Below are positions 1-58,207 of a stretch of DNA of 64,000 nt, in pieces. Below the pieces are notes generated by a model. It was given only the letters and a program-made list of their open reading frames with translations, searched no databases and had not been told where the DNA came from. The stretch's first letter is position 1; every line of letters begins with the position of its first letter. Both the position numbers and the translations under genes were made by a program. The stretch lies in IMG/VR virus record IMGVR_UViG_3300032782_000001, positions 372,001 through 436,000 of that record; one strand, written 5' to 3'.

Positions 1-1359
1 CCCGATGAGACCACGGGCCCACTCCTTGTCGGTAATCGGAACATCATCCGTACCGGACTTTACGGAGGGGAGATTTCCAGTGGCAACAGCGGGAACAGGT
101 GGAGTAGAAGATCCGAAATTAATCTTTTTATCCAAGGACGTAAGATTCTCGTCAGAACTGAATTTGACTCCGTCAATTTCAAGAACTTTGGACTTGATTT
201 GAGGAATAGGTTTAGTCGCATCTTTCTGTTTAGCAGGAGGGGTAACAGGAAGAGGAAGAGCAGGAAGAGCAGGAGCAGGAGCAGGAGGAGCAGCTGTTAA
301 AGGTTCTGCAACAATAGAACTCGGTTCACGATTCTGAGTAGGCCGAAATGTCGGTCCGGTAGTTAACAGGGCTGCTTCGATATCAAATGCAGTTGGTTTA
401 TCAAGCTGGATCAGGACACGGACCAATTCAGACCAACCATGTAGTCGGTATTGGAAAAATCGAGTGGCTACAGGATACGTAGGTTTTGCTCCAATGTCAA
501 ATCGCATAGCACTAGAAATAGCGGAAACCATCTGATCCCGAATCCAAGATGGACTCTGCACTGCCACCAAAGAATCCAAAGATTCGAAGGCCTTCCTCGG
601 ATTTTGATCGATAAGAGATAAAATCCTGTCTATAGCCGAATAGTCATCGAATCGAAAAAACTCATTGGCGGAAGCTATGGTAATTGGGCCGCGCACGGAC
701 ATAGTGCTGAGAGCCCTAATGCAAGTCCGTGGGCATGAGTCCAACATGCGAACAACAATTTTCAAAGCTTCCGGATCAGCTTCCAGAGATTCTTGAGTAC
801 AAACTTGATGCAAACGTGCGAGAATTTCTTCGGGAAGAGGTGGGTGTACTGGATATTCCTCTACTCGAGATCGAATAGGAGCTTTGATTTTATGAGGCTC
901 TGTAGTACAGAGAATGACAGTAAGAAGCCTGTCTTCCATTGCTTTCAATAAAGCGTCTTGAGCTTGCGAAGTGAGCCGCTGCGCCTCATCAATTAAATAA
1001 ATGCGCCGACTTCCTTCATATTCAGTATCTCGGATCATCTCACGGATTTTATCTACTGTTCCTTGAGAAGCCGCATCAAGTTCCTCAACATCTTGAGATG
1101 TCTCTTGTAAGACGGATATACACGCATCACACTCCCCGCATGGTTCCCCGTCTGAAAGATCAGTACAAAGAATGGCTCTCGCAACAACGCGAGCCAATGA
1201 TGTTTTTCCGCAGCCTTTTGGGCCGCCAAACATCATAGATTGATCCGTTAGGGTCCCGTCTCGACTTCGAGTAAGAAGAAGTTGTACGATTCCCTGATTT
1301 CCGAGGACCTGGCTGAATTTCCTTGGCCTATATTTGAGGTCCAGAGGTGTTCCGCTCAC
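1..1359 (-). CDS. dnaX: DNA polymerase III gamma/tau-like clamp-loader ATPase (3' end runs off the window; absent from the ORF track)
   Basis: Manual translation from GTG at 1359: MSGTPLDLKYRPRKFSQVLGNQ..., Walker A GPKGCGKT, Zn cluster CTD...PCGECDAC, ELDAAS, Walker B IYLIDEAQRL, DALLKAMED, CTTEPHKI, then a Pro/Ala-rich linker. The frame is open to base 1. Confidence 0.9.
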   Translation of the reverse strand, partial: MSGTPLDLKYRPRKFSQVLGNQGIVQLLLTRSRDGTLTDQSMMFGGPKGCGKTSLARVVARAILCTDLSDGEPCGECDACISVLQETSQDVEELDAASQGTVDKIREMIRDTEYEGSRRIYLIDEAQRLTSQAQDALLKAMEDRLLTVILCTTEPHKIKAPIRSRVEEYPVHPPLPEEILARLHQVCTQESLEADPEALKIVVRMLDSCPRTCIRALSTMSVRGPITIASANEFFRFDDYSAIDRILSLIDQNPRKAFESLDSLVAVQSPSWIRDQMVSAISSAMRFDIGAKPTYPVATRFFQYRLHGWSELVRVLIQLDKPTAFDIEAALLTTGPTFRPTQNREPSSIVAEPLTAAPPAPAPALPALPLPVTPPAKQKDATKPIPQIKSKVLEIDGVKFSSDENLTSLDKKINFGSSTPPVPAVATGNLPSVKSGTDDVPITDKEWARGLIG

Positions 1360-1379
1360 GAAGAATATTACACTAGGAA

Positions 1380-2204
1380 TCAGAGAAGTCGGAATTTGTC
1401 TTTAATATCAGATACGAGAGTTGTGAACTTAGACGTTGCTGTAATACCAGGATGCCATGCTAAGTCCATTGCTGCAAGGTCATACTGAAAACGGATCTTG
1501 GATCCCGGGATAGGGGTTCCTGACCCATCTCGATCACGACCAATCAACCATAACGTATCTGCGATCGCAGATACAGCAGTGATGTCATGAGCCACGACAA
1601 AAATCGTGTTGCGTTCGTCCATTAACGCAACTTGAGAAATGAGATCGCAAGTCTTGTCCTTCATGAGAGGATCGAGACCCGTGAATGGCTCATCCATCAC
1701 AATGAAATGTTCACTACACAATAATTGTTGGATAATAGCGACGCGCTGCCGTTGACCACCTGAGAGTTGAGAAGGATACTCCGAAGCCTTCTCTGTGAGT
1801 CCAAACCGTTCCAGCATTTCCAAAGACCGATCTCGGGCCTTCCCATCCTGATCATGTTGTGAAGCTGCAACCAAAAGATTCCCTAGAACAGTTCGATGAC
1901 GGAGAAGCGGATAATTTTGAGCTACTACCCCAACCAACCCAGCTTCGACAAGAATACTTTTTCCATCACCATTATTGATGGTTACGCTTCCCGATGTGGG
2001 AGCTTGAAGACCAGACATGATTCGTGAAAGTTGGGTCTTCCCGATGCCAGAAGGCCCAAGGATGCCTACAATCTGCCCTTGTGTGCAGCCAGGCCGAACG
2101 ATATCTCGAACTTCGGCTTTGACATTTTGTAATATCTGCTTATCTCCGAATTTCAAGCAGATATCATTGACGGAGACCAAAACATCTTTGATTTCGTAAT
2201 CCAT
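1380..2204 (-). CDS. ABC transporter ATP-binding subunit (NitT/TauT-like)
   Basis: Walker A GPSGIGKT, signature LSGGQRQR, Walker B IVMDEPF, switch VVAHD. Confidence 0.93.
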   Translation of the reverse strand: MDYEIKDVLVSVNDICLKFGDKQILQNVKAEVRDIVRPGCTQGQIVGILGPSGIGKTQLSRIMSGLQAPTSGSVTINNGDGKSILVEAGLVGVVAQNYPLLRHRTVLGNLLVAASQHDQDGKARDRSLEMLERFGLTEKASEYPSQLSGGQRQRVAIIQQLLCSEHFIVMDEPFTGLDPLMKDKTCDLISQVALMDERNTIFVVAHDITAVSAIADTLWLIGRDRDGSGTPIPGSKIRFQYDLAAMDLAWHPGITATSKFTTLVSDIKDKFRLL

Positions 2205-2216
2205 TTGTATCTCAAT

Positions 2217-2996
2217 TCATTGACGTTCCCACGTCAGTTCAGAATATGGGCAAAGTATTCGTTTGAGCCAAGCAATGCCCCAGTCTTGGAAGATTCCGAC
2301 AGCCAGCACGGTGAGTTGGAGAGCAGCAATAGATGCCAGGTGAAAATGCTTATTCTGATTGAGGAGCATGGTTCCGATGCCGCCTTCGGATCTACTAATG
2401 CCTTCCACCATCGTTAGCATCATCCATCCCATTGCCGCATTCTGTCTGAGGACTTCGAGCGAATAATCAGCACGCCCAAGTATCACGACTTCTAGAATCG
2501 CCCGCCATTCACCCATACGGAGGGTTCGAGCATGGTCGAATTCTTCTCTCGGAATACTAGCAACGACTTCCGCCATTGAAGTCATGAAGAACGTGCTCAT
2601 CCCGAAGACGAGCAGAGACACTTTAAGCCAGTGGCCAGCACCGAACATAAGGGTGAACAGCACAACAAACCCGGTCATCCCGAAGAAACGGGCTTTAGAA
2701 AATGCGGCTACGATAGGCCGCATCGCGGGAAGAACCGTCAGATACGCCATGCCGATGGAGAGAACAGAAGATATGATGAGCGCTTGAAGATTTGTCATGA
2801 AGCTCGAGTAAAGCTCGTAGACGAGACCGTCGTTGCGAAACATCTCCACCCACGCGCTCGCTACTTGAGCCGGCCTCGGGATGAGCTCAGAAGGATAGAA
2901 ACTCCATACGAGCAAAGCGAGCCCGACTTGGAATAGAACGATGAACAGAATGACCCGACTCGATACGGGTCTATTTGGGCGGAACGCGTCAATCAT
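2217..2996 (-). CDS. ABC transporter permease (NitT/TauT-like)
   Basis: Several hydrophobic segments; EAA-like loop EEFDHARTLRMG; LTMVEGISRSEGGIG resembles the SsuC/TauC-type motif; adjacent to the ATPase. Confidence 0.85.
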   Translation of the reverse strand: MIDAFRPNRPVSSRVILFIVLFQVGLALLVWSFYPSELIPRPAQVASAWVEMFRNDGLVYELYSSFMTNLQALIISSVLSIGMAYLTVLPAMRPIVAAFSKARFFGMTGFVVLFTLMFGAGHWLKVSLLVFGMSTFFMTSMAEVVASIPREEFDHARTLRMGEWRAILEVVILGRADYSLEVLRQNAAMGWMMLTMVEGISRSEGGIGTMLLNQNKHFHLASIAALQLTVLAVGIFQDWGIAWLKRILCPYSELTWERQ

Positions 2997-4795: not shown

Positions 4796-4823
4796 ATGGT
4801 CTCCGTATTGGTCTCCGTATTAT

Positions 4824-11401: not shown

Positions 11402-12262
11402 TTACACCGGATCGAGATCGAAAATGGAACTTTCGATCCTGCTCCCACTTTCAACTTTCCGAGCTGCTACATGTTTACGCCCTTCTTCGCATCGATTCTG
11501 ATAATCACATCTTGAACATTCAGGACCAGTCTTTGGATCAAAAATTTTTAATTTGATCTTATTTGCTACTTCAAATGTCGTGTCGACATTTGCACGCATA
11601 GCATCAGCATCATACAATATCCATTGAATGGGTTCATCTGGGAATTTATAATGGAGGAATCCAAGCTTATCAGGTGCGACCCCGTATTTAATATAATAAA
11701 GTACAGAGTACCAAATCAGCTGCTCAGGGTCCACATACTTCTCTCTGTGTTTACTGCCTTTCCCGTCAATGATGGAAATGGGATTTTTAGTCCCATGGAT
11801 GAAATCAGCTTTCCCACCGAGTTTCAATGTAGACCCGTGTTTCGGGCTAGTGTAGATCAGTGTGAGGTCAACTTCGGATCTACTAGAATCGGTTAACAGC
11901 TTATGCTTCCTAATAACATCTAAGATTCTCGGTACCAGATTCCGCACTTCATCGACGGTTTTCAGGAATAGGTCCTTATACTCAGAAGTGTCAGCTTTTT
12001 CTTCCACGAAAATAGCTCGAGTAGCTGATTCAACGGAAGCAAGCGTCGTAGCTAGAACGTCTGGAGACATCCAAAACTGTCGGTTGTAAAACCATTCAAA
12101 GACTTTCCCCATAGACTTCCCAAACACAGTATCGTGAAGATTCCACTGCTGAGGGAGTCTCTGAATATATGAAAACATGTATTTACGTGGGCATGTCAAG
12201 TAGCACTTGCGACCTGAATAGCTCAGGTAAATATCATAATGGGGCCCGTTAGCCATGATCAA
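11402..12262 (-). CDS. PD-(D/E)XK RecB/Cas4-like nuclease
   Basis: LSYSGRKCYLTCPRKY, LGGKADFI, IIDGKGS, QLIWYSV, C-terminal CSRCDYQNRC. Confidence 0.85.
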   Translation of the reverse strand: MIMANGPHYDIYLSYSGRKCYLTCPRKYMFSYIQRLPQQWNLHDTVFGKSMGKVFEWFYNRQFWMSPDVLATTLASVESATRAIFVEEKADTSEYKDLFLKTVDEVRNLVPRILDVIRKHKLLTDSSRSEVDLTLIYTSPKHGSTLKLGGKADFIHGTKNPISIIDGKGSKHREKYVDPEQLIWYSVLYYIKYGVAPDKLGFLHYKFPDEPIQWILYDADAMRANVDTTFEVANKIKLKIFDPKTGPECSRCDYQNRCEEGRKHVAARKVESGSRIESSIFDLDPV

Positions 12263-12264
12263 CG

Positions 12265-13263
12265 CTACTCGTCGAGAGTCCCGGCCTCGGCGGCTTCGAG
12301 GATTTCTTCTATCCTAACTTTGACATCATCAGCCATGTTCGAATTCTTCAAATCTTCCAATCGGTTCCGGATACCGCCATCTTCAGGAGCTGAAGCTCCT
12401 GCTCGAAGCTGAACCAAGAAATCATTCAAAGACCTTCGCTCCGCATCCAATTGTTTCTTTTTCTCTAGGTCGAACACATTTAAAGCGTCCGCGTGCGGAA
12501 TGATGTGCTCTTCCACGTGGACTCCTCTGGAATCGCATTTAATAAGTGAAACTTTGGGTTTCCTCTCCATATTTTCAAAAGTCAGAGCGCCACGAGATAC
12601 TGCACCCAAATTCACGAATTTAATTCCAAGGTGTTCTTGAACGCCTTGATCTTTGTGATAATGGCCAAAGATATAAACATCAGGGCAACCATCGAATACC
12701 AAATCTCGATAATCAAAGATGTGCTCATGGAAGAAAGATTGGATCCGCTCTTCTGGAGCATAAGCAGCAAGAGCGTGGACGAATGCGATGGTGTAATCAG
12801 AGCCATCTTTCTTGCGGACAGAATCATGGAGGTGAGCTTCCTCCATACCGACCGTATATTCCACACCCACTACACGAACGCGAAGAGTGCCGGATTCAAA
12901 AGTTTCGTCTCGAAGTTGAGAGACAGCTCGAGACCGGAACAGGACGCCAAGAGGCTGCCTGGGGAGAGAATCCGGGTCATTACGGCTCATGTCATGGTTG
13001 CCCGCCACAGCAAAAGTGGGACACGAGCCTCCAGCATGAATTTTTGCAACGTGGCCTAACGTTGCCATTGTAGTCTTGTTTGCTTCTTTAACGTGGAAGA
13101 GATCCCCTCCACGTAGAACAGCATTGGCTTGGAAACGCCTGGCCATATCGGCTTGCCAAGCCAGCTTATCAAGGATTGCAGACCGATAATCGTCTTTCCG
13201 GAATCCCGGAGATAAATCGGCCAGATGTTCATCTGAGGAAGTGAGGAACCGGATTTCTGACAA
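12265..13263 (-). CDS. sbcD: SbcD/Mre11-like metallophosphoesterase
   Basis: DEHL, GGDLFH, AGNHD, FVH and FGHYH motifs. Start moved to TTG 13263 after GGAGG. Confidence 0.85.
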   Translation of the reverse strand: MSEIRFLTSSDEHLADLSPGFRKDDYRSAILDKLAWQADMARRFQANAVLRGGDLFHVKEANKTTMATLGHVAKIHAGGSCPTFAVAGNHDMSRNDPDSLPRQPLGVLFRSRAVSQLRDETFESGTLRVRVVGVEYTVGMEEAHLHDSVRKKDGSDYTIAFVHALAAYAPEERIQSFFHEHIFDYRDLVFDGCPDVYIFGHYHKDQGVQEHLGIKFVNLGAVSRGALTFENMERKPKVSLIKCDSRGVHVEEHIIPHADALNVFDLEKKKQLDAERRSLNDFLVQLRAGASAPEDGGIRNRLEDLKNSNMADDVKVRIEEILEAAEAGTLDE

Positions 13264-16600: not shown

Positions 16601-16623
16601 GCCCGAGGTTACACGTAACAGAT

Positions 16624-17085: not shown

Positions 17086-17153
17086 GCAGGTCCTCTTAGG
17101 AAGAGGCGCCACCAAAGGGCTATTTAGATATCGAACTAGTGTACCATAGGGGT

Positions 17154-19271: not shown

Positions 19272-19318
19272 ATGTAACGGTACGCAGAAAATTCGGGAAG
19301 ACGAATGTATTAAGGGGA

Positions 19319-34452: not shown

Positions 34453-34769
34453 GTCTTGAGGCCGTATCGTTTGGTATGAAAGAGTTCCAAGCTCAACTTG
34501 CTAATACTGGCAAGGATATGGAAGAAGTCGTACAATTGATTATCGAGCTTTACGATCGATATGATCAGGTAAGATTCCCGTTCCAATTCAAGAGTAGAGA
34601 ACCCCAAGCAGAGTTGGAACAAGTTGGCGGATACAGGACGCCACCTCGGAGGGTACCTCTACCTAGACCCACTTTTATGGAACGTGCTCGCAAAGAAATA
34701 GTCATTACTGCTAATAGAATCACAGTTTTTATTTTGAATATTATGACACTTTGGATGTTTCAGCGGTGA
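34407..34769 (+). CDS. Hypothetical protein with a C-terminal hydrophobic segment
   Basis: ORF after thyX; start uncertain. Confidence 0.45.
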   Translation: MVSSYFTGFNREAYLSLEAVSFGMKEFQAQLANTGKDMEEVVQLIIELYDRYDQVRFPFQFKSREPQAELEQVGGYRTPPRRVPLPRPTFMERARKEIVITANRITVFILNIMTLWMFQR

Positions 34770-35143: not shown

Positions 35144-36028
35144 GTGAACATGAGCATCAGGCAATTCGTACCCCCGAAGTCTCTTAGTTCAATGAGGGAA
35201 ATCGGGAGGTCCATGAGTGATAAGGGATTCTTTGAAATTGACCTCGTGGAGGCCAATATTACATGGACGAATGCGTTCACACTGCAAAAATTGGGATTGA
35301 CTTCTGAACAGGTCAGAAGCATGACAATGTTTGATATCGTCCCTGTGGATCTCCATGATCCGATTCGGGACCATCTAGAAGATCACGCTTCAGGAAAACC
35401 AAAAAAATTCGCTATTTGGCCAGTTAAAACTTCCACTGGGAAAATTTCGTGGTGGTACATCTTTGACTCCAAAGTGGAATTTCCAATAAGCTGGTCATGT
35501 GCTGAATTCGTCCAGGAAACTGACGTGGATGGACCAGCTTATACTTTCATGCGCATCACTATGATGAACGCAAATAGTTATGGAACACTCCATAATCGCG
35601 TTCAAGAGTTGGATTCTTGGATCCATGATCAAGTTTCGCGTCTAGATGAAAAAGACGCTGATCACGACAAAGCTCTCTCGGAACTAAGTGAGAGAATGAA
35701 ACATGTTGTGAATGCTGCCACTCGTGCAGCTTCGACATCTCTCGAAGCTGCGTCAGCTGTTAAGGACTTAAAAGAGTCTCTGAAAGAGCAACTAGAAAAA
35801 CATGAAGAAGAAATCCTTAAATTAATTAGCACGGACGTTCATCACGACAGAAGGATGGAAGCGTTCGAGAAACACGTTAAAACTACTACAGACGTTGCAA
35901 TCAAGTCTATTACAACTCAAGCGGATAAAGCCGGAAAAGGACTTTCTCGGAAAGTCACGATTCCCGTATCCACAATTGCAGCGATTGCCACTATTATTCA
36001 GTGGCTGATTCAGCATTTCCTGAAATAG
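35144..36028 (+). CDS. PAS-domain protein with coiled coil and C-terminal TM anchor
   Basis: FFEIDLVEANITWTNAFTLQKLGLTSEQVRSMTMFDIVP (PAS-like); heptads; terminal VSTIAAIATIIQWLI. Confidence 0.65.
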   Translation: MNMSIRQFVPPKSLSSMREIGRSMSDKGFFEIDLVEANITWTNAFTLQKLGLTSEQVRSMTMFDIVPVDLHDPIRDHLEDHASGKPKKFAIWPVKTSTGKISWWYIFDSKVEFPISWSCAEFVQETDVDGPAYTFMRITMMNANSYGTLHNRVQELDSWIHDQVSRLDEKDADHDKALSELSERMKHVVNAATRAASTSLEAASAVKDLKESLKEQLEKHEEEILKLISTDVHHDRRMEAFEKHVKTTTDVAIKSITTQADKAGKGLSRKVTIPVSTIAAIATIIQWLIQHFLK

Positions 36029-36053
36029 TTCAATATCTTGCGTATCGCAAGAT

Positions 36054-42491: not shown

Positions 42492-42527
42492 CTCAGATCA
42501 ATACATTCCTGGTACCGTGGAGATACG

Positions 42528-44336: not shown

Positions 44337-44448
44337 GTGTCAAGAATACATCGGAGTCATATTAGATCCAGCCCAAATCGGGTCCGCCTTAATAATACAA
44401 AGATCTCATGACCAAATCTGGTCGCATTCTATTGTCGAATATTATTAG

Positions 44449-45783: not shown

Positions 45784-45986
45784 TCTTCAGGCTCATCCCC
45801 CACCGGAACAGTGGAGTCACACCATTCACAATGACCCAAACCGTTAGCTTGACGTAAAACACGATGGCCTTTCCCAAAAGCAATCTCATCCAATTTCTTG
45901 AAAATAAGTTCGTCTTCAGCCGATTTAATTTGTTCTCGCGCAGATATAACTGCCGCAGAATGTATAGGCAAAGGTTGACGTGCCAT
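45744..45986 (-). CDS. Hypothetical protein ending in WEVMES
   Basis: 80 aa; CEWC...C; shared C-terminal motif. Confidence 0.55.
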   Translation of the reverse strand: MARQPLPIHSAAVISAREQIKSAEDELIFKKLDEIAFGKGHRVLRQANGLGHCEWCDSTVPVGDEPEECPMNIIWEVMES

Positions 45987-46957
45987 GCGAGACTGTACGG
46001 TCGGTCGTGCGTCACCACATCTTCTGTTTCAGTGGGTACTCGGGCGTCGGCAAAGATGAATGCGCCGGGCATCTCGTTCGAACGAGACAGGCAATTCACA
46101 CTGGGCTTGCAGACCCTGCCAAACGCCATATGGCAGATCTCTACGGATTCACCAAAGAACAGCTCTTCGGACCGAGTCATTTTCGCAATGCAGGCGATCC
46201 GAGATATCCGAAGAATGTTATTCGAAATCTCGGATTCCAATACTTTGATGGTCAAGTAGAGTTGCGAGATGTTGTAGGAGAACTTCGTGATGGCAAACGC
46301 TATATCATCGTAGAAACAAGAAATCTCCCTGGAACAGAACCAGTTCCAGGGAAGCCAGGTTGGCCGGCTGTTCCGCGGCAACCTCTCCAACTCGGGAAAG
46401 CTCGATACTTCATCGAAAACGATCATCCGAATTTCTTCTTGTCGCCTCGTGAGGCGCTGCAACTCTACTGCAATCTCATGAACGATCTCTATCTCGATTC
46501 ATGGATTCGCAAGGGTATTGAAGTTCATCAACAACTTGCCGAAATCCATCAGCAAGATGGAAAGGAAGTCTTCATGCGTCATAGTTACGATCGCATGATG
46601 GGCGTAATCGTGAATGACGTGCGGGAAGGTACCAATTGGAAAACGTCAGATGGGAACTTCTTTACATGCTTTTCTGATTTCCGCCACCGACACGAAATCT
46701 CCCTCGTCAGAGCGTTCAAAGCTGAGTATACTCCAGTCGTGATTCGCGTGAAGCACCCGAAGATTACAATGCCCCCATACGATCATCGTTCAGAGACGGA
46801 ACAAGCTAGTATTCCGGATTCTGCATTCGACTTCGTCATCGATAATGACGGGAGTCTCCAAGAGCTCTACACAAAGGTCGAGAAGATCGTAGAAACGGTC
46901 ATTGCATCTGACGGTTGGAGGCTTCGAGGGCGGAGCTTATATGAGGAGGCCTCGTGA
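45980..46957 (+). CDS. Deoxynucleoside monophosphate kinase-like
   Basis: FSGYSGVGKD, GLADPAK, PREALQ, SDFRHRHE, HRSE, FDFVIDNDGSLQELY. Confidence 0.85.
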   Translation: MPCETVRSVVRHHIFCFSGYSGVGKDECAGHLVRTRQAIHTGLADPAKRHMADLYGFTKEQLFGPSHFRNAGDPRYPKNVIRNLGFQYFDGQVELRDVVGELRDGKRYIIVETRNLPGTEPVPGKPGWPAVPRQPLQLGKARYFIENDHPNFFLSPREALQLYCNLMNDLYLDSWIRKGIEVHQQLAEIHQQDGKEVFMRHSYDRMMGVIVNDVREGTNWKTSDGNFFTCFSDFRHRHEISLVRAFKAEYTPVVIRVKHPKITMPPYDHRSETEQASIPDSAFDFVIDNDGSLQELYTKVEKIVETVIASDGWRLRGRSLYEEAS

Positions 46958-48023: not shown

Positions 48024-48935
48024 ATGCGCCGCCATACGAGTGCCGTAGTCACGCCTGACGACATTCGACAGTATGTCAAAGGTAAGAATAAGAGCATCCG
48101 TGTAACGGATGATAAGGATGGGGCTGTCAACGTCGAGTCAGCTCAATTCGATTTTAGTTTCAAACCCAAAAATTTCAAATGGCACGTCCGAATCGAAGCA
48201 ACGGACGATCCTTCTGACGCAGACGAAAAAGTCACGCCCGATCCGGTGAAATTCATCGCCGGGTTCCTTGGGGCTGGTGTTCCAGGCGGTGAACATTTCG
48301 AGAAAATGTCTGCGGGTCCAGATGAATTTTCCGGACTCCTCAGGCATCTAGCCTCTCGGGTGGAATCTGGTTCTCTTGGGCCCAGGAAGCTTAGCGCCAT
48401 GCTAAGGCGTGCCGCTGTCATCCCTAATATCAACCTTCTCCGTCGCATCGTGGCAGCTGTAGCCAGGACAGCGGCCGGTCAAGAGACTTCTCTTGCGGAA
48501 GTCAAAAAGTTACAAGAGGAGATGAAAAATAAGGGTTGGAAAGTCAAAGAGACTGAGACTGACGCTGGACTGCCTGAACTTACTGTCGATGTCTCCGGAA
48601 TCTACGAGGCCAAAATCCGAGCTGAAAGCATCTCTTACGCCTATGAGATGAAGACTCTTGGATTCCCCGAATTCGACGAAAAGGGCGACACGGAAGACCC
48701 TATTTCAACGATTCGAGCATATGCCAAGAGGGACGATATAAGTACGGCTTTGGACGAAAAGAAAAAGAGAGAAGAACTGGAAACCGGAAGGACCGAACCT
48801 GCCCCCGGCACCGTTCCCTCCCACGGTCTACCAGCTCTCCAACCTCAGAAAACGATCAAGGACGAAGAGCTAGGAGACACCGCCCGTCCTGAACCAATCC
48901 GGACCGACAAGACCGCCCCCGCTAAGCGTAAGTGA
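48024..48935 (+). CDS. Hypothetical protein with an internal duplication
   Basis: DEKVTPDPVKFI versus DEKGDTEDPISTI end two similar halves; central LRHLASRVES helix. Confidence 0.65.
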   Translation: MRRHTSAVVTPDDIRQYVKGKNKSIRVTDDKDGAVNVESAQFDFSFKPKNFKWHVRIEATDDPSDADEKVTPDPVKFIAGFLGAGVPGGEHFEKMSAGPDEFSGLLRHLASRVESGSLGPRKLSAMLRRAAVIPNINLLRRIVAAVARTAAGQETSLAEVKKLQEEMKNKGWKVKETETDAGLPELTVDVSGIYEAKIRAESISYAYEMKTLGFPEFDEKGDTEDPISTIRAYAKRDDISTALDEKKKREELETGRTEPAPGTVPSHGLPALQPQKTIKDEELGDTARPEPIRTDKTAPAKRK

Positions 48936-48960
48936 TTCCTACCATCACGTACATGATTAT

Positions 48961-49347
48961 ATGAACTGGGAAAACCAGGCAAGGTCCCATGTCGAGTCCG
49001 GACTACTTGAAATCCATCTCAAGCCCGAAGAATCTTACGAGCTTTGCCAGGTTATTCAGACCCGGATCCGTCAAATCTCCCATCGTGATATTCCGCAGGA
49101 AATCGATTTCCGATTGGTTTCCACACTTGCACGATTCGGTTGCAGTTTGACTAGGTCCAATTCTTTGCAGGATTTGTCCTACGAAGATGTTACTGAGTTA
49201 CTCAAACTGTTTTGGAGCCCCAAAATTCGGGAAGTAGAAAAAGAACTCCAATTCGCCCTTGCGGTATTTGTTTTGAGGCAAACCGGTCCTATTGACCCCG
49301 TATGGCAAGATCAGATTTCGAAAGAAATGATTGACATTCTCGGTTAG
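48961..49347 (+). CDS. Hypothetical protein
   Basis: 128 aa; ACGTAC 8 nt upstream of the ATG. Confidence 0.6.
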   Translation: MNWENQARSHVESGLLEIHLKPEESYELCQVIQTRIRQISHRDIPQEIDFRLVSTLARFGCSLTRSNSLQDLSYEDVTELLKLFWSPKIREVEKELQFALAVFVLRQTGPIDPVWQDQISKEMIDILG

Positions 49348-49628
49348 CTTTCCATCACATCCACAATGATCACCATCTCTGGAATGAGAGAATCCAGAGG
49401 AAACCAATATTTTTCCCAGCCGATGGCAAACGATGAGTGAATTTTGAGGAGAACGAAACTCGGATCGGTCTCCGTTATTTCCCAAGAGAAATGTTCGATT
49501 TGAAGCAATAACTTCATCTCATACAGAGTTCTCTCAATAAGTTGGCCTGTCAGTGGATTCTTCCACCCTCCTAGCCCGCCAACATTTGCACTAGCGAGTG
49601 ATTTGAAAAGGGCGGTTTCAGTGCTCAT
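49344..49628 (-). CDS. Hypothetical protein ending in VDVMES
   Basis: 94 aa; shared C-terminal motif. Confidence 0.6.
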   Translation of the reverse strand: MSTETALFKSLASANVGGLGGWKNPLTGQLIERTLYEMKLLLQIEHFSWEITETDPSFVLLKIHSSFAIGWEKYWFPLDSLIPEMVIIVDVMES

Positions 49629-49906
49629 GATTCCATGACTTCAATTACGGGAATCATGTGAGGACGAAGTTCAGCCAAACCGAACTTCCCCGTTTCGGTA
49701 GTGGACTCCGCAAAACCCCACGTCCAGTGGATTTCCACATAGCCTTCGCCTGCCAGCTCACTAACATTCTTCCAACTGGTTATGGTATTGACTGACTTCA
49801 TGACAGTCAAAATAGTTGTCACACGTTCTACGGCATCGCGCCAAGGAGAAGATCCAACATCACATCGAGCAAGATGGATCTTCATTTGGATGGATGTCAC
49901 AATCAA
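49625..49906 (-). CDS. Hypothetical protein ending in IEVMES
   Basis: 93 aa; shared C-terminal motif; ATGA overlap with the next gene. Confidence 0.6.
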   Translation of the reverse strand: MIVTSIQMKIHLARCDVGSSPWRDAVERVTTILTVMKSVNTITSWKNVSELAGEGYVEIHWTWGFAESTTETGKFGLAELRPHMIPVIEVMES

Positions 49907-53492: not shown

Positions 53493-53511
53493 GGAACTAC
53501 TTTACCTATAT

Positions 53512-54927
53512 CTAAAGCCTATCTTCTGCAAAAACGTATCCACGCTCTCCGAATTTCACTCGCATGACTTCCATGATCCATGCTTTCCGGAAATTCCGGA
53601 AAGAAGCAAACTCTCGAAGTCTCCTAAATTCAGTCATAAGTACGTTATCTGCGATCCTGTGAACTTCCACCAAATGCCCATCAATGTAAGAGACGGTCCT
53701 TTCTGAAGTGGGGAATACAAAAGAACAATTCGCACAGATGCGATCACCAGATCGCATCACCAGACCGCAACTTGGACACATCTTCGTAGACGCAGATGCA
53801 ATGAGACCGCGTCCAACGAACAAATCATAAGATCTGACATGATCGGGTAAACCATGACGCAGAGCATTTCCGGAGTGATCGAGGATCACAGGAGGAGCCG
53901 GAATGCTGGCTGAAACATACTCCGGACGCATGCATCGACATGCCTGCTGCATATAGAGAGTTCGGGACAAAGTCGGTCGAGCTAAGATTACACATTTCAA
54001 TTCCGGACAATCCCATCCTTCGGAGAGCACCAAACAATTGGAAAGAACTTTGATATCACCTCTCAAGAACGATTCGAAGAATTTCCGCCTGGTCTCATCA
54101 GGAGTATCACTGTCAATATGTTCTGCAGTGACATCCGCACCTCGAAACGCTCGGACGATAGACTTGGAGTGTTCGACCCCCACCGCGAAACAGATGGTTG
54201 GACGACCGAAAGCGTGAGTTCGATAATGAGATATAATGTCTCCAACCAAATCAATGTCGTTCATGATCGCGTTTAACTGTGTCTCATCATAGTCCCCTCG
54301 AACGACTTTCAACCTGGCAAGGGCGGAGAGATTAGCGTATGGACGCGTAAACACACGCGGCCTCACTAAGTATCCATATTGAATTAATCTGGTAACTTCC
54401 TCACCGACAATGATTTCATCGAAGTCATTCCCGAGACCTTGTCCATCATAACGCCATGGAGTCCCCGTGAGTCCGAGAATTTTGGCTTCCGGATAAGCCG
54501 AGATGACTCGACGAGTGGATGCGTTGGGAGCTCGATGAGCCTCATCGACAATGATAATGTCGAAATGAGCGAATGCTTCATCCTCCATTTGGTTCAAAAA
54601 AGTATGGAGGGAACTAACCTGGATGGGTGCTCCGGGCTTGTTGGAAAAGGCTTTGTCGTCGCCAGAAGGGTTGGCCATAACGAGCCCGATGTCGTTCGGA
54701 TCGATCCCCTCTTGGACGAATTTCTGTAATGCTTGCCTTACGAGCTCCCGCCGATGAGCCAAAAATAAAATACGGAGACCAGCCGCAGCTGCGCGCTGCG
54801 AAACCAAAATAGCTACAAACGTCTTGCCGGCTCCCATATGCAAGACATACAGGATGCGCCGCACTCGCGTCCAAGCATCAAAGATCCGACGGACAGATGA
54901 GTCCTGATAATATCGGGCCTTATTCAT
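53512..54927 (-). CDS. SF2 DEAD/DEAH-like helicase with a C-terminal Zn ribbon
   Basis: Start moved to ATG 54927. MGAGKT, LAHRRELVRQ, IIVDEAHR, LGLTGTP, VLSEGWDCP, QQACRCMRP, CPSC...CANC. Confidence 0.9.
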   Translation of the reverse strand: MNKARYYQDSSVRRIFDAWTRVRRILYVLHMGAGKTFVAILVSQRAAAAGLRILFLAHRRELVRQALQKFVQEGIDPNDIGLVMANPSGDDKAFSNKPGAPIQVSSLHTFLNQMEDEAFAHFDIIIVDEAHRAPNASTRRVISAYPEAKILGLTGTPWRYDGQGLGNDFDEIIVGEEVTRLIQYGYLVRPRVFTRPYANLSALARLKVVRGDYDETQLNAIMNDIDLVGDIISHYRTHAFGRPTICFAVGVEHSKSIVRAFRGADVTAEHIDSDTPDETRRKFFESFLRGDIKVLSNCLVLSEGWDCPELKCVILARPTLSRTLYMQQACRCMRPEYVSASIPAPPVILDHSGNALRHGLPDHVRSYDLFVGRGLIASASTKMCPSCGLVMRSGDRICANCSFVFPTSERTVSYIDGHLVEVHRIADNVLMTEFRRLREFASFRNFRKAWIMEVMRVKFGERGYVFAEDRL

Positions 54928-56455
54928 CGCCAACCCATGGGCAAACGTACGTCCGATTGCCTTCGATCTTCCAACCTGGGAGAGGATTGATTTTGAAGTG
55001 GAAGAACTGAGAAGCGCTAATCTTCTTCCATGAATTTGACTTCGCGTGTTTCCCGCATGTGGGAATATAGAGGCGAGCTTTGGACCAAAACATTGTCGCA
55101 TGATTGGAACACTTGACGCATTTCCAAATGACGACAGTGACTTCCTTGTCATTGGACTCTTGGACTACAGCCTTTCGTCCTTTGTGGTTACCGGCTAAGA
55201 CCAATACGATATCACCAGGTTCCAAAGCAAATTGCGGAAAGCTGCTGTACGCTTCTCGCATGATCGCAGATGACTTTTCGTAGTCATTGCGTTTAATCAA
55301 TGATTCCAGAGACGAACGACGCTGCTTCGCCAGCTTCGCGACAGCCCGATGGATCAGTTTAATGTCGCGAACATGCTCGGCGAGTTTCTTGCGATTGACC
55401 GCCATTTCTTCATGGCGCCGTTTCGCTTCTTGTTCCCGTCGTTCCCGTTTCTCTTGAAGAGCCCGATTTCGCTTATCCTTCCGAAGTTTTTCTGCTTCCA
55501 GCTTCTCCTGATGTTTCTTAGTTGCTTCTTCAGCCCTTTGCCGGCCGGAATTGTGCCAATCTTCCCAGGCTTCTTGGAGACCTTTTTCGAAGTCGCTAAT
55601 GAATAGCTCGGGTCGATGCCCCCAATTTGGGATCCGACCGCCCGGGATGGAGGCGTACAAATTCAACAGTCTATTTTTCTTGGAGGAATTGCGAATGAAT
55701 TGGAGGCTATACACTAAATGTTGACGTACGCGTTCTGCAGATCCTCCTTCACCTTGAGTGGCTTCAGACTTAATCGGCGGACATTTATTCAACGACCGCC
55801 CAGCCTCCGCGTATGTCATCGGCTCTCCGAAGAACCCGAAACATGCGAGCAGGCAATACCACTGCCGTGTAGTAAGAAGCTTCAAGACGCCGCGAATAGT
55901 GTTAATGGTGCGGAGAACATCTTTCGGGTGAACATCTAGAGAATGTTCATTTCCGCAATCTACTACACGGCAATGATATGACAAATTATCGTGAACGAAT
56001 GGAAGCTTCTTGTTGGCAATTTCTGGCCAAATTTCTTCCGGGATTTGACCGAGACCTTCAGCAAGCCGCTTGGCGGAGGCCTTCCAATCACCTCGCTTGT
56101 CATCCCATGGACTTTCACGACCGTGTTCATAAGAAGAGATAACGTCGTTCGGTAGTTCGGTTAGTCGAGAGACGGATGTGATACTGTCGTGCCCTAAACT
56201 ATTGCGCAATTGGAAAATGCGATTGCGTTTATGAGATGACTTGGAAGGCGGTTCTCCTCGGATTTTGAGAGGATGGATAGCAACCGATGTGTCCATCCCC
56301 GATTCCACTCGACGTACGAACCTGTCGGCTGACACTCCGAAGATGAATTCGACGTCTTCGGCCGTCATCTTCTCGCCAAACACTTCCCAATTGCGAGTGT
56401 TAAGCGTTCGATCGCAGCCGATTGGCTCTTCGGACGGCTTGTCCTCGGAGTTCAT
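54920..56455 (-). CDS. Multidomain regulator: XRE-like HTH, sigma-4-like HTH, coiled coil, KOW-like and Cys/His motifs
   Basis: SITSVSRLTELPNDVISSYEHG; LTTRQWYCLLACFG...MTYAEAGRSL...SAERVRQ; LEPGDIVLVLAGNHKGRKAVV; CVKC...CGKH. Confidence 0.6.
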   Translation of the reverse strand: MNSEDKPSEEPIGCDRTLNTRNWEVFGEKMTAEDVEFIFGVSADRFVRRVESGMDTSVAIHPLKIRGEPPSKSSHKRNRIFQLRNSLGHDSITSVSRLTELPNDVISSYEHGRESPWDDKRGDWKASAKRLAEGLGQIPEEIWPEIANKKLPFVHDNLSYHCRVVDCGNEHSLDVHPKDVLRTINTIRGVLKLLTTRQWYCLLACFGFFGEPMTYAEAGRSLNKCPPIKSEATQGEGGSAERVRQHLVYSLQFIRNSSKKNRLLNLYASIPGGRIPNWGHRPELFISDFEKGLQEAWEDWHNSGRQRAEEATKKHQEKLEAEKLRKDKRNRALQEKRERREQEAKRRHEEMAVNRKKLAEHVRDIKLIHRAVAKLAKQRRSSLESLIKRNDYEKSSAIMREAYSSFPQFALEPGDIVLVLAGNHKGRKAVVQESNDKEVTVVIWKCVKCSNHATMFWSKARLYIPTCGKHAKSNSWKKISASQFFHFKINPLPGWKIEGNRTYVCPWVGDE

Positions 56456-56555
56456 TCAACCAAGTACACCCCCGATTGGAGAATTTAGGACTCCATGACA
56501 GATCGCACGCGCATAAACTACGAACCGGAAGCCTTCATCGGCTGTACCTTGCCAC

Positions 56556-57275: not shown

Positions 57276-57431
57276 GATCGTTCAATTACCCCGAACGACG
57301 TTCCGAACCAGGCACTACCCCCTAGAAAAGGGATCGTCCACGCAAAAATCGAACGAATACTTTGAAGCGCTCAGGGACCCAATTTTCCCTGTGCATGAAC
57401 TTCCCCATCCAAAAAGATTTACCTCGTCACT

Positions 57432-57498
57432 CCCTCCCCCTCTCCCCTATCCCATACCCTCCCACCCCCATACTACTCCCCCTATCCCTATTTATCCC
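57432..57498. repeat. Pyrimidine/C-run low-complexity tract (G-runs on the minus strand)
   Basis: ccctccccctctcccctatcccataccctcccacccccatactactccccctatccctatttatccc: at least 10 runs of 3 or more C. Confidence 0.85.
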
Positions 57499-57842
57499 TA
57501 CTGGGTGGCCATGGGGGCGAGGGCCCGCATCTCCGGGATGTCGTAGTAGCAGACCGGCCCGTAGCAGTTCGGGGGCGTCGGCGCGGGGCGCCAGCTCCGG
57601 GCCGCGGCGGGCCTTTCCGCGCGCTTGGCGGTCGTCGGGCGGGTCTCGGGCCGCGGGAAGATCGGAGACGCTCCCGGGGCCACGTAGACGGCCGGAGCGA
57701 CCGGTTCGGGCTTCGGCGCTTCCTGGACGGGGGTCGGATCGGGCTGGCGCGTCCCGTAGATGCGCAGTTCGCCTTGGAAGAGCGAGGGGCCGAAGGCGTA
57801 GGCGGCGAGGCCGAGGACCAGCAGGACGAGGAACGTCTTCAT
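57498..57842 (-). CDS. Small secreted or membrane-anchored Pro/Ala-rich protein
   Basis: MKTFLVLLVLGLAAYAFG signal/TM; promoter motif 8 nt upstream. Confidence 0.75.
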   Translation of the reverse strand: MKTFLVLLVLGLAAYAFGPSLFQGELRIYGTRQPDPTPVQEAPKPEPVAPAVYVAPGASPIFPRPETRPTTAKRAERPAAARSWRPAPTPPNCYGPVCYYDIPEMRALAPMATQ

Positions 57843-57894
57843 ATCTCCGGATACGGCGGACGGGGCCGGACTTGTCGCCCGGCCCCGCGGCCCG

Positions 57895-58155
57895 TCACTC
57901 GGGCAGAACGGCCAGGGCGGCGCGGAAGAGGGCCGGGCGGCCGGTCATGAAGACCCAGGGCGCCCCGTCTTCCTCGTCGCCTTGACGGAACAGGGCGACG
58001 CAGGAGTTGCCCCGGGCGACGAGGCCAACCGCGTTCCCCTTGAGGTCAGGGCCGGCGTGCCCCTGGTTGACGTTGATCTTGGGGTCACCCGAGACCTTCA
58101 CTTGGTACTCGCGACCCGAGAACACGAACGAACCCTCGAAGGACCATTTGCTCAT
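57895..58155 (-). CDS. Small early-type hypothetical protein
   Basis: ATG 58155, 8 nt after the promoter motif; 86 aa. Confidence 0.7.
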   Translation of the reverse strand: MSKWSFEGSFVFSGREYQVKVSGDPKINVNQGHAGPDLKGNAVGLVARGNSCVALFRQGDEEDGAPWVFMTGRPALFRAALAVLPE

Positions 58156-58207
58156 GGGTTGCAATACGGCGAGGGCCGCCAGGTTTCCCCAGCGGCCCTC
58201 GGTCCGT

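What the first reader, a model, noticed from the sequence alone, without database searches (positions are those of the whole stretch)
1271..58169. A YGTAH element sits exactly 8-9 nt before many start codons: probable leaderless transcription from one -10 element
Seen: NYGTAH followed by 8 nt then the start codon for dnaX (1368-73), ligA-C (16609-14), 19271, 19319, 48961, 56455, 56556, 57842 and 58155. The gap is 9 nt for ligA-N (17139-44), 42491 and 44336. Most have no Shine-Dalgarno. The same GTA core is the -10 box of the GC-rich early cassettes. Inference: one (probably phage or ECF-type) sigma specificity, with transcription starting at or next to the start codon in the core genome.
Basis: partly seen in the sequence, partly recalled or inferred. 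Interest (0 to 1): 0.6.

Follow-up and report, generated by a model that had tools for sequence, protein, structure and literature searches.

The report
Leaderless-gene promoters in a huge phage
In this 436-kb phage about one gene in five has a short GTA-containing promoter box exactly 12-13 bases before its start codon, so its mRNA probably begins at the start codon itself; this way of expressing genes is known from Deinococcus-Thermus bacteria and Thermus phages, and here it turns up with a new box in a clade of huge wetland phages.

Summary
Across the genome, GTA lies 12 or 13 nt before the 5'-most start codon of 80 of 533 genes, against 11.3±3.3 in shuffles. Two other complete huge phages (393 and 427 kb) show the same peak. 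The state is conserved between orthologues of about 50% identity whose upstream DNA is otherwise unalignable.

It is yGTAnnGT, a TAnnnT -10 hexamer always preceded by G. A second grammar is A(A/G)(A/G)T-N15-GTA.

In the GC-rich arm the boxed form sits exactly 12 nt before GGAGG(TGA). In the core genome it sits 12 nt before ATG or GTG. Position +12 from the G is therefore the likely transcription start.

Divergent genes 16-20 nt apart share one palindromic GTAC or GTAnnnTAC core, which fits a double-stranded promoter element.

The phage encodes an RpoD-like sigma and a small ECF-like sigma. No RNA polymerase was detected.

Leaderless transcription is well supported but only indirectly, because no RNA data exist. 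'One sigma specificity' is doubtful: T at +6 is 79-86% in unboxed sites and 22-35% in boxed ones.

The closest known cases are the leaderless promoters of Thermus phages φYS40 and Lalka27a and of Deinococcus-Thermus genomes.

The parts
1365..1371 (-). GTAATAT -10-like element, 12 nt before the GTG start (1359) of the dnaX-like clamp-loader gene; no upstream box
   Evidence: orthologue in G001 also has GTA at -13
12262..12268 (-). GTAGCGT element, 12 nt before ATG 12256 (284-aa gene; second in-frame start candidate)
   Evidence: G001 orthologue has GTAACGT at -12
16606..16612 (-). GTAACCT element, 12 nt before ATG 16600 of the ligase C-terminal half (HhH + BRCT)
   Evidence: conserved as GTATTCT in G001 and GTAAATT in G002
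17141..17147 (+). GTACCAT element, 13 nt before ATG 17154 of the ligase N-terminal half (adenylation + OB)
   Evidence: G001 and G002 orthologues carry GTACCAT and GTATCTT at -12
19277..19313 (.). Back-to-back pair in a 47-nt divergent spacer: GTACCGT (19283-19277, minus strand) before ATG 19271, and GTATTAA (19307-19313, plus strand, with an AAAA/AAAT box) before ATG 19319
   Evidence: the 19271 orthologues in G001 and G002 keep GTA at -12
34464..34470 (+). GTATCGT element, 12 nt before ATG 34476
36023..36048 (+). Boxed leaderless promoter: AAAT (36023-36026), N15, GTATCGC (36042-36048), ATG at 36054 (DUF488 protein)
42498..42504 (-). GTATTGA element, 13 nt before ATG 42491
44343..44349 (-). 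GTATTCT element, 13 nt before ATG 44336
   Evidence: orthologues in G001 and G002 keep GTATCTT and GTATTGT
45992..46001 (.). Shared palindromic GTAC core of a bidirectional pair: 20 nt between ATG 45986 (minus strand) and GTG 46007 (plus strand); reads GTACAGT on one strand and GTACGGT on the other
48930..48955 (+). AAGT box, N15, GTACATG; ATG at 48961
53499..53505 (-). GTAAAGT element, 13 nt before ATG 53492
56461..56550 (.). Divergent pair in a 100-nt spacer: AAAT box (56486-56483), N15, GTACTTG (56467-56461) before ATG 56455 (minus strand, 511-aa KOW / sigma-r4-like protein); and GTACCTT (56544-56550) before ATG 56556 (plus strand)
57848..57873 (-). AAGT box, N15, GTATCCG, 12 nt before ATG 57842 (114-aa ORF with a signal-peptide-like N-terminus). 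A GGAG also lies 4-7 nt before the ATG, so this site is ambiguous
58161..58186 (-). AAAC box, N15, GTATTGC, 12 nt before ATG 58155
58435..62545 (.). GC-rich arm: 16 units of A(A/G)(A/G)T-N14-CGTAy-N8-GGAGGTGA-N4-5-ATG, about one per 260 bp, each before a small gene. G of GTA at 58460, 58749, 59035, 59303, 59709, 60024, 60217, 60415, 60651, 60954, 61400, 61762 (minus strand) and 61460, 61822, 61993, 62521 (plus strand)

Best explanation
GTA is the core of a promoter -10 element. In promoter numbering it is G-13 T-12 A-11 when the gap puts ATG 13 nt from the G, and one base closer in the commoner 12-nt class.

The host RNA polymerase core, carrying a sigma-70-family factor, opens the DNA there. 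It starts RNA 12-13 nt after the G. The likeliest factors are the phage's own RpoD-like 400-aa sigma and/or its small 221-aa ECF-like sigma.

In roughly 100 core genes that nucleotide is the A or G of the start codon. The mRNA then has no 5' leader and no Shine-Dalgarno, and must be translated by the leaderless route.

In the GC-rich arm the same geometry puts the start on the first G of GGAGGTGA. That gives a 13-nt leader which begins with the ribosome-binding site.

Two promoter grammars share the core:
- a boxed form, A(A/G)(A/G)T-N15-GTA, used with the SD leader in the arm and leaderless for about 20 core genes;
- an unboxed -10-only form, yGTAnnGT, used leaderless for about 85 genes.

**Shown:** the motifs, their positions and statistics, their conservation, and the sigma genes.

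**Inferred:** that they are promoters, where RNA starts, and which sigma reads which class.
For: 1. **Position-specific enrichment.** 80 genes against 11.3 expected; GTAnnnT 58 against 2.9.
2. **The element is a TAnnnT hexamer.** TAnnnT at this place is preceded by G in 37 of 37 and 21 of 25 cases.
3. **The two-part form has a sharp spacing optimum.** AAAT-N15-GTA occurs 98, 95 and 171 times, against about 45, 40 and 120 at neighbouring spacings, in the three genomes.
4. **The same boxed element sits at one fixed distance from two different functional starts.** These are GGAGG at +12 (31-32 sites in G000, 11 each in G001 and G002) and ATG/GTG at +12 or +13.
5. **Relatives.** G001 (393 kb) and G002 (427 kb, 40% GC) show the same peaks: 60+23 of 475 genes and 75+41 of 603. 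A 43-kb piece of the 485-kb GenBank phage LR745208.1 shows 6 of 49 genes at -12.
6. **Orthologue conservation.** The leaderless state is conserved among orthologues of about 50% amino-acid identity (odds ratio 7.5, p = 6e-7; odds ratio 5.4, p = 2e-4). Only GTAnnnT and its distance are kept.
7. **N-termini agree.** In 33 of 36 orthologue pairs that both carry the motif, the N-termini agree within 4 residues.
8. **Enriched where a promoter is needed.** The motif is found at 28-40% of genes at divergent junctions, against 10-15% of co-directional genes with 15 nt or less of spacer. SD frequency does not change between these contexts.
9. **Shared cores at divergent pairs.** Divergent start codons 16-20 nt apart share one GTAC or GTAnnnTAC core. 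That is the symmetric bidirectional -10 arrangement, with starts 18 bp apart and -7T/-11A reciprocally paired, as described in PMC10268837.
10. **Free-standing GIY-YIG homing endonuclease genes carry the element**.
11. **Start codons.** ATG 81%, GTG 19%, no TTG.
12. **Polymerase and sigma inventory.** Two sigma-70-family genes are conserved in all three phages. No RNA polymerase beta, beta' or T7-type domain was found.
13. **Mapped precedent.** The same geometry has been mapped by experiment elsewhere. Thermus phage Lalka27a has TANNNT, and late TAGGGT, with starts six nt downstream on the initiator A/G. D. radiodurans has TANNNT about 6-7 bp before about one third of ORFs.
Against: - No transcript 5' end has been seen. 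The only runs holding this DNA are two DNA metagenomes.
- GTAnnnT alone has little information, with thousands of copies in the genome. It cannot be a sufficient promoter, so something else must contribute.
- 10-15% of tightly packed co-directional genes also carry it. This is unusual for promoters but known for T4 late genes.
- Some genes have GTAnnnT at -15/-16, meaning a 2-4 nt leader or a different start.
- The host is unknown, so its ability to translate leaderless mRNA is unknown. The phage encodes no IF1, IF2, IF3 or S21 that could favour this route.
- Several large proteins of 1,200-2,200 aa have no family match. An unrecognised phage RNA polymerase cannot be excluded.
- My gene calls are home-made, from ORF length and hexamer score.
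Confidence: 0.7

Rival explanations
1. One sigma reads everything. A single phage or host sigma recognises the GTA core. The upstream box and the T at +6 are interchangeable helper elements, just as a good -35 or an extended -10 can compensate for a weak -10 in sigma-70 promoters.
For: - The GTA core and the distance to the presumed start are identical in all classes.
- The boxed leaderless sites are intermediate, with T at +6 in 38-60%.
- Compensation between promoter elements is established for sigma-70 (general knowledge).
Against: - T at +6 is at background in boxed sites and at 79-86% in unboxed sites, in three genomes.
- Arm sites add CGTATy, which core sites lack.
- The phage carries two different sigma-70-family genes plus a protein made of two region-4 domains, all conserved in the relatives.
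Confidence: 0.25
2. An RNA-level translation signal. GUAnnGU, 12-13 nt before AUG, is a non-Shine-Dalgarno ribosome-binding or factor-binding site on a leadered mRNA, not a promoter.
For: - The fixed distance to the start codon resembles an RBS.
- It occurs in some tightly packed co-directional genes.
- No RNA data exclude it.
Against: - In the arm the same element keeps its distance to GGAGG, not to ATG.
- It is coupled to a box 15 nt further upstream at a sharp spacing.
- It is symmetric on both strands at divergent pairs 16-20 nt apart, where each gene's 'leader' would lie inside the other gene.
- It is depleted where spacers are short, although SD is not.
- It has the TAnnnT form of a -10 hexamer.
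Confidence: 0.07
3. An RNA processing site. A phage or host endoribonuclease cuts long transcripts 9 nt after GUA, producing leaderless or SD-first mRNAs after transcription.
For: - It would also explain the fixed distance to both ATG and GGAGG.
- About a third of the arm units lie in strong hairpins with GTAT in the loop.
Against: - The conserved upstream box at N15 and the strand-symmetric cores at divergent gene pairs are properties of double-stranded DNA.
- Divergent genes must each have a promoter, and none other is visible in 16-50 nt spacers.
- Canonical TTGACA/TATAAT-like promoters are scarcer than in shuffled sequence: 40 against 66-87.
Confidence: 0.05
4. An artefact of gene calling or composition, for example in-frame stop codons or Val codons upstream of wrongly called starts.
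For: GTA followed by A or G at -13 makes an in-frame TAA/TAG, which the 'first start after a stop' rule favours. Smaller bumps are seen at -16 and -7.
Against: - The main class (-12) is out of frame for a stop codon, and shows 51, 60 and 75 genes against about 6.
- GTAnnnT at -13 is 3-8 times the equivalent frame positions.
- The state is conserved in orthologues, and N-termini are flush.
- The result holds at 40% and at 50% GC.
Confidence: 0.02

Closest known systems
Leaderless middle and late promoters of Thermus phages (φYS40; Lalka27a late TAGGGT promoters)
   Same: - A -10-type TAnnnT element with no -35.
- The start lies six nt downstream, on the A or G of the initiator codon.
- Promoters are dense, sitting before many genes.
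- Back-to-back promoters occur in divergent spacers.
- Promoter consensus differs between temporal classes (bioRxiv 10.64898/2026.04.20.719267).
- The unboxed class here (GTAGGGT, GTAGCGT, GTAGAGT...) closely resembles TAGGGT.
   Different: - Here a G directly before TA is invariant.
- Lalka27a's conserved C at -25 is not seen here.
- A boxed class (A[A/G][A/G]T at -31 to -28) exists here.
- The genomes are 390-485 kb, from wetlands, with unknown hosts.
- They carry their own RpoD-like and ECF-like sigma genes. By my recollection of the φYS40 abstract, that phage relies on host sigma-A; the paper is not held.
- No starts have been mapped here.
The '-10 region adjacent to ORFs' pattern of Deinococcus-Thermus genomes (Zhong et al. 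2025, PMC12340547; de Groot et al. 2014)
   Same: - TANNNT about 6-7 bp before the ORF.
- About 30% of genes there, about 20% here.
- It coexists with a GGAG RBS class.
- It is shown to act as a promoter giving leaderless mRNA.
   Different: - That is a property of cellular genomes read by host RpoD. Here it is a phage clade with a private G-TAnnGT variant and its own sigma genes.
- Whether the host belongs to that phylum is unknown.
ECF (group 4) sigma promoters (-35 'AAC', -10 'CGT'; for example B. subtilis sigma-W TGAAAC-N16-CGTA, from memory)
   Same: - The arm units read A(A/G)(A/G)T ... CGTAT, a short -10 with CGTA and no T at -7.
- There is a required upstream box.
- The phage has a 221-aa two-domain sigma whose only (weak) structural matches are ECF sigmas.
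   Different: - The box is AAAT/AAGT, not AAC.
- The box-to-CGTA spacer is 14 nt rather than 16-17.
- The sigma falls below the ECF superfamily cut-off (33 against 42.9 bits).
T4-type late transcription (gp55 sigma; -10-only TATAAATA promoters before many late genes) and T4 middle promoters (MotA box at -30 plus a -10)
   Same: - A -10-only class placed before many genes, including genes inside co-directional arrays.
- A second class with a box centred near -30.
- Phage-encoded sigma-like factors acting on host polymerase core (general knowledge).
   Different: - The sequences differ.
- T4 late mRNAs have leaders and SD.
- No gp55, gp33 or MotA homologue was looked for by name.
Symmetric bidirectional -10 promoters (Warman et al. 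2021, as summarised in PMC10268837)
   Same: - Divergent starts 17-21 bp apart share one -10 core.
- With GTAnnnTAC, the -7T and -11A of each strand pair with each other, exactly as described for the 18-bp class.
   Different: - Here both products are leaderless protein-coding mRNAs.
- The symmetry extends to the G (GTAC, GTAnnnTAC).

Membership tests
Promoter -10 element placed for leaderless mRNA (Deinococcus-Thermus / Thermus-phage type) | TAnnnT hexamer ending 5-7 nt before the start codon | tested here: met
   GTAnnnT at -12/-13 in 58 5'-most starts against 2.9 expected. That leaves 5 or 6 nt between the hexamer and ATG.
Promoter -10 element placed for leaderless mRNA (Deinococcus-Thermus / Thermus-phage type) | No Shine-Dalgarno between the element and the start; ATG or GTG start | tested here: met
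   69 of 80 sites lack an SD-like 4-mer. Start codons are ATG 65, GTG 15, TTG 0.
Promoter -10 element placed for leaderless mRNA (Deinococcus-Thermus / Thermus-phage type) | Primary transcript 5' end on the first base of the start codon | not testable with these tools
   Only two DNA metagenome runs hold the sequence; there is no RNA run.
Promoter -10 element placed for leaderless mRNA (Deinococcus-Thermus / Thermus-phage type) | The element acts as a promoter, so it is found at heads of transcription units | tested here: met
   Found at 28-40% of genes at divergent junctions, against 10-15% at spacers of 15 nt or less. Both genes of divergent pairs 16-50 nt apart carry it. This evidence is indirect.
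ECF sigma promoter | -35 'AAC' and -10 'CGT' separated by about 16-17 nt | tested here: not met
   The box is AAAT/AAGT/AGAT and lies 14 nt before CGTA. CGTA itself is present in 93% of arm units.
ECF sigma promoter | A cognate ECF sigma (sigma-2 plus sigma-4 domains) encoded nearby or in the genome | tested here: inconclusive
   A 221-aa protein has region 2 at 30 bits (over Pfam's cut-off) but falls below the ECF superfamily cut-off. The model has two helical domains and a linker, with pLDDT 65. The best Foldseek hits are ECF sigmas at E 0.08-1. There is no PDB sequence hit.
Extended -10 promoter (TGnTATAAT) | TG at -15/-14, one base away from the hexamer | tested here: not met
   The G directly abuts TA (position -13). 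The base before it is T in only 43-64% of unboxed sites.
Canonical sigma-70 -35/-10 promoter | TTGACA-N16-18-TATAAT-like sites, enriched before genes | tested here: not met
   40 sites with 2 or fewer mismatches, against 66-87 in shuffled genome. There is no cluster.
Symmetric bidirectional -10 promoter | Divergent starts about 18 bp apart with -7T/-11A reciprocally paired | tested here: met
   Four GTAnnnTAC pairs with 16-17 nt between start codons in G002. GTAC pairs with 20 nt between starts in G000 (two, one of them in the window at 45986/46007) and in G001. The geometry is as in PMC10268837. The starts themselves are not mapped.
Phage with its own RNA polymerase (T7-, N4- or phiKZ-type) | A recognisable RNA polymerase gene | tested here: inconclusive
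   There are no Pfam RNAP beta, beta' or T7-type matches. However, the T7-type control rang nowhere, and six proteins of about 1,200-2,200 aa have no or no informative PHROG match.

The most novel reading that the evidence does not exclude
A clade of 390-485-kb phages runs a private promoter code, an obligatory G at -13 in front of TAnnGT, read by its own fast-evolving RpoD-like sigma. That sigma has K or R where E. coli sigma-70 has the -12-contacting T440.

The clade would couple this code to a programmed change in how translation starts. Arm genes are made from mRNAs that begin at the Shine-Dalgarno. A fifth of the core genes are made from leaderless mRNAs.

The temporal programme would then be set jointly by sigma choice and by the cell's capacity for leaderless translation. 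The hairpins that pair the promoter spacer (CCTCC) with the SD would silence read-through copies of arm genes.
Probability: 0.2. Interest if true: 0.7.

Novelty: new variant of a known kind. Interest (0 to 1): 0.5.

Why it matters
- **Annotation.** If the starts map as predicted, this gives a simple rule (GTAnnGT-N5/6-ATG) for fixing start codons and transcription units. It would apply to a whole clade of uncultivated huge phages, where gene callers trained on Shine-Dalgarno will misplace about a fifth of the starts.
- **Range of the mechanism.** It would extend leaderless expression, so far documented for Thermus phages and a few bacterial phyla, to phages of 0.4-0.5 Mb that carry their own sigma factors.
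- **Host clue.** It points to a host that can translate leaderless mRNA well.
- **Synthetic parts.** The short, strictly spaced elements would be compact parts for synthetic biology. This includes a 9-bp bidirectional core that would drive two leaderless genes.

Tried and rejected
- **RNA evidence.** The look-up of sequencing runs found only two DNA wetland-metagenome runs. Read laying was therefore not used, since contigs or DNA reads cannot show RNA starts.
- **Nearest phages by DNA.** None were found in GenBank phages.
- **Relatives of the 511-aa KOW protein.** None in IMG/VR.
- **Relatives of the small sigma in bacterial genomes.** None, so there is no host clue. The host stays unknown.
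- **Phage translation factors that might favour leaderless initiation.** IF1, IF2, IF3 and S21 are all absent.
- **Phage RNA polymerase.** No beta, beta' or T7-type domain was found. The largest proteins are a collagen-like tail fibre, a baseplate protein and unknowns.
- **Canonical sigma-70 promoters as the 'real' early promoters.** They are depleted, not enriched.
- **Upstream stop codons as the source of the signal.** This explains part of the raw -13 count only.
- **Functional split of promoter classes.** Unboxed sites precede DNA polymerase, clamp loader, ligase halves, homing endonucleases, glycosyltransferases and a tail fibre alike. The classes therefore do not map simply onto 'replication' against 'structure'.
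- **φYS40 paper.** PMC1885378 is not held. What I say about it rests on the Lalka27a preprint's citation and on my memory of its abstract.

Full report
**What the window is.** The window is bases 372,001-436,000 of a single 436,316-bp contig. That contig is an IMG/VR virus record with direct terminal repeats, rated complete. It was assembled from a wetland metagenome. It carries 48 tRNA genes and a tmRNA. About 50 kb is a GC-rich arm at roughly 60% GC (genome 430 kb through the ends to 45 kb; window 58-64 kb). The remaining core is about 48% GC. Window genes include a dnaX-like clamp loader, a RecD2-like helicase, a class II ribonucleotide reductase, ThyX, and an NAD-ligase split into two genes. 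I called 534 genes with a home-made ORF and hexamer-score procedure covering 87% of the genome.

**The observation.**
- Genome-wide, GTA begins 12 nt before the 5'-most start codon of 51 genes and 13 nt before 29 more. Other upstream offsets have about 5-8 each, and internal in-frame start-like codons show no peak.
- Dinucleotide shuffles of the upstream 60 nt give 11.3±3.3 against 80 observed. In the window alone the figures are 1.9 against 12.
- Allowing the second to fourth start candidates adds about 25 more, giving about 106 genes, or 20%.
- 69 of the 80 have no SD-like 4-mer. Their starts are ATG (65) or GTG (15), never TTG.

A T lies six bases after the G in 58 of 80 sites.
- The element is therefore G + TAnnnT. 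When TAnnnT lies at this position it is preceded by G in 37 of 37 and 21 of 25 cases.
- One artefact had to be weighed. In the 13-nt class, GTA+A/G makes an in-frame stop, which my start rule favours. GTAnnnT at -13 still exceeds the equivalent frame positions 3-8 fold in three genomes, and the 12-nt class is immune to this bias.

**A second element and a second context.** In a subset of sites an A-rich box sits 15 nt upstream of GTA.
- AAAT-N15-GTA occurs 98 times against 40-65 at other spacings. The same N15 spike is present in the two relatives.
- Listing these sites shows two contexts. In the GC-rich arm the unit reads cgyAA(A/G)TyCG...CGTATy-N8-GGAGGTGA-N4-5-ATG.
- GGAGG begins exactly 12 nt after the G of GTA in 32 of 46 boxed sites. 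In G000, 31 of the 49 boxed sites that have a GGAG within 40 nt have it at exactly +12.
- In the core the same boxed GTA lies 12-13 nt before ATG/GTG itself, for 18-22 genes.
- The box is A(A/G)(A/G)T. Among the 107 GTA-N9-GGAG sites, against about 33 expected, AAAT occurs 32 times and AAGT 17 times.
- The window's GC-rich end holds 16 such units in 4.2 kb.

One element thus keeps a fixed distance to two different things: the first G of a Shine-Dalgarno, or the first base of a start codon. This is the strongest internal argument that position +12 from the G is where RNA begins. It also argues that GTA is not a ribosome-binding signal.

**Two grammars, not one.** Sites with the box have T at +6 at background level (22%, 26% and 35% in the three genomes). 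Sites without the box have it in 82%, 86% and 79% (p = 1e-10, 1.5e-7, 2.6e-5).
- Arm units add C before the G (93%) and T after GTA (84%).
- Unboxed sites read yGTAnnGT.
- So either two sigma specificities share a core, or one sigma uses compensating elements. I favour two.

**Sigma and polymerase inventory.**
- A 400-aa RpoD-like sigma with regions 1.2, 2, 3 and 4.
- A 221-aa sigma with region 2 and a second helical domain. Its only structural matches, though weak, are ECF sigmas.
- A 321-aa protein made of two region-4 domains.
- All three are conserved in the relatives, at 31-34%, 58-61% and 62-69% identity.
- No RNA polymerase subunit or T7-type polymerase was detected. Several large proteins remain unassigned.
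- Canonical TTGACA/TATAAT-like sites are half as frequent as in shuffled sequence.
- In region 2.4, all three phage RpoD-like sigmas have K or R where E. coli sigma-70 has T440. Two of them have H for Q437. From memory, these are the residues that read position -12. I regard this as a lead for the G-13 requirement, not as a test.

**Relatives.** An exact-pattern scan of IMG/VR with the arm unit found two other complete huge phages: G001 (393,220 bp, 49.7% GC) and G002 (426,960 bp, 40% GC).
- I fetched both genomes.
- They show the same peaks. G001 has 60+23 of 475 genes and G002 has 75+41 of 603, and most of these carry T at +6.
- Among 174 and 152 reciprocal-best orthologues (median 51% and 47% identity), the leaderless state is shared far more often than chance predicts (odds ratio 7.5, p = 6e-7; odds ratio 5.4, p = 2e-4). 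The upstream alignments keep nothing except GTAnnnT and its distance.
- Orthologue pairs that both carry the motif have flush N-termini, 33 of 36 within 4 residues. Among the other pairs, 23% are off by 10 or more residues.
- A 43-kb stretch of the 485-kb GenBank phage LR745208.1 (RNR 42% identical) also shows 6 of 49 genes with GTA at -12.

**Promoter or RNA signal?** Several observations point to a double-stranded DNA element at heads of transcription units.
- The motif is found before 28-40% of genes at divergent junctions. It is found before only 10-15% of co-directional genes with 15 nt or less of spacer. SD frequency is flat across these contexts.
- Both members of many divergent pairs with only 16-50 nt between their start codons carry it.
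- With 20 nt between the starts, the two elements share a GTAC palindrome. This occurs in the window at 45986/46007, at genome 340756/340777, and once in G001.
- With 16-17 nt between them, they share GTAnnnTAC (four cases in G002). There the T at -7 and the A at -11 of one strand pair with the A at -11 and the T at -7 of the other.
- That is exactly the symmetric bidirectional promoter described for bacteria, with starts 18 bp apart (PMC10268837).
- Free-standing GIY-YIG homing endonuclease genes also carry the element.

**Function of the genes served.** The unboxed class precedes DNA polymerase, the clamp loader, both ligase halves, homing endonucleases, glycosyltransferases, a sugar epimerase and a tail fibre. 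The boxed leaderless class precedes RtcB, a nicotinamide phosphoribosyltransferase and unknowns. No simple functional split emerges. The timing of the arm genes is untested.

**Comparison with what is known.**
- Thermus phage Lalka27a: all promoters contain TANNNT. Late ones are TAGGGT with no -35. Starts lie six nt downstream. [quoted passage not shown]
- Deinococcus-Thermus genomes: TANNNT lies about 6-7 bp before about 30% of ORFs and acts as the promoter for leaderless mRNA (PMC12340547).
- The present case matches both in geometry and in the TAnnGT flavour.
- It differs in five ways: the obligatory G; the boxed class and its use in front of an SD-first leader; the phage-encoded sigmas; genome size and habitat; and the lack of any RNA evidence.
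- It fails the tests for an extended -10 (the G is at -13, not TG at -15/-14), for a canonical -35/-10 promoter and for a textbook ECF promoter (box sequence and spacing).
- Two full-text searches for leaderless expression in jumbo or huge phages found no report of such a system.

**Verdict.** Leaderless transcription from a GTA-containing -10 element is the best explanation. I put it at about 0.7, limited by the absence of mapped 5' ends and of a known host. 'One sigma' is doubtful. It is a new variant of a known kind of system, of moderate interest.

Noticed in passing
Whole genome G000. In the window: genes 37763-38554(+), 45744-45986(-), 49344-49628(-), 49625-49906(-): 45 of 534 predicted proteins end in ...MES-stop, and about 30 more in MDS, HES, MEA, MNS or MSS. 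The consensus tail is (I/V)(V/I)xx(V/I)MES, often preceded by CxxC. Codons vary synonymously, so the conservation is at protein level. These are mostly small proteins with no Pfam match. The same tail is frequent in G001 (17) and G002 (42). The stop is mostly TGA. Function unknown: it could be a shared C-terminal module or a targeting signal.
   Followed up: partly
Genome 139122-139296 (outside the window); tRNA cluster at genome 97-115 kb; tmRNA at 141433-141807; window 59363-59436: There are 48 tRNA genes and a tmRNA (tag ANDNGALRIAA). Two adjacent tRNAs have anticodon UCA, which ARAGORN calls 'SeC'; they may be opal suppressors. This is notable because most MES-tail genes stop at TGA. A lone tRNA-Lys(UUU) sits in the GC-rich arm inside the window.
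   Followed up: no
Window 15803-16600(-) and 17154-18281(+): The NAD-dependent DNA ligase is split into two genes on opposite strands: adenylation + OB, and HhH + BRCT. Each has its own leaderless-type element. The split is conserved in G001 and G002.
   Followed up: partly
Arm units, for example window G-of-GTA positions 58749, 59035, 59709, 60415; genome 142, 16981, 21186, 44994: About a third of the arm promoter units lie in a strong inverted repeat (dG -19 to -33 kcal/mol over 37 nt). The promoter spacer carries CCTCC/CACCTCC, which pairs with the downstream GGAGG(TGAC), and GTAT sits in the loop. In a read-through RNA this would hide the SD. An RNA started at the local promoter would lack the 5' arm. 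The same is seen in G001 (327100).
   Followed up: partly
Genome 369397-370362(-), just upstream of the window; window 26549-28192(-) and 54920-56455(-): A conserved 321-aa protein consists of two sigma-70 region-4 domains with no region 2. Two large window proteins (547 and 511 aa) have weak region-4-like HTH matches, and the latter also has a KOW motif. These are candidates for reading the A(A/G)(A/G)T box or for acting as co-factors.
   Followed up: partly
Whole genome: Canonical sigma-70-like promoter sequences (TTGACA-N16-18-TATAAT with 2 or fewer mismatches) are about half as frequent as in shuffled sequence: 40 against 66-87. This suggests avoidance.
   Followed up: partly
Genome 1-45 kb and 430-436 kb (window 58-64 kb): The arm is at roughly 60% GC, against about 48% for the core. 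It is packed with small genes, each with its own promoter and a near-perfect SD (GGAGGTGA). G001 and G002 have equivalent promoter-dense regions (G001 320-350 kb, G002 175-225 kb), even though G002 is 40% GC overall.
   Followed up: partly
Genome 206736-207656(-) and 222912-223769(-): Free-standing GIY-YIG homing endonuclease genes lie inside the large minus-strand gene block, each with its own GTAGGGT-type leaderless element.
   Followed up: no
Genome 213925-220413, 235210-240468, 272277-276950, 192091-196641 (all minus strand): Four proteins of 1,500-2,200 aa have no PHROG match at all. A 2,424-aa collagen-like tail fibre lies at genome 303504-310778.
   Followed up: no
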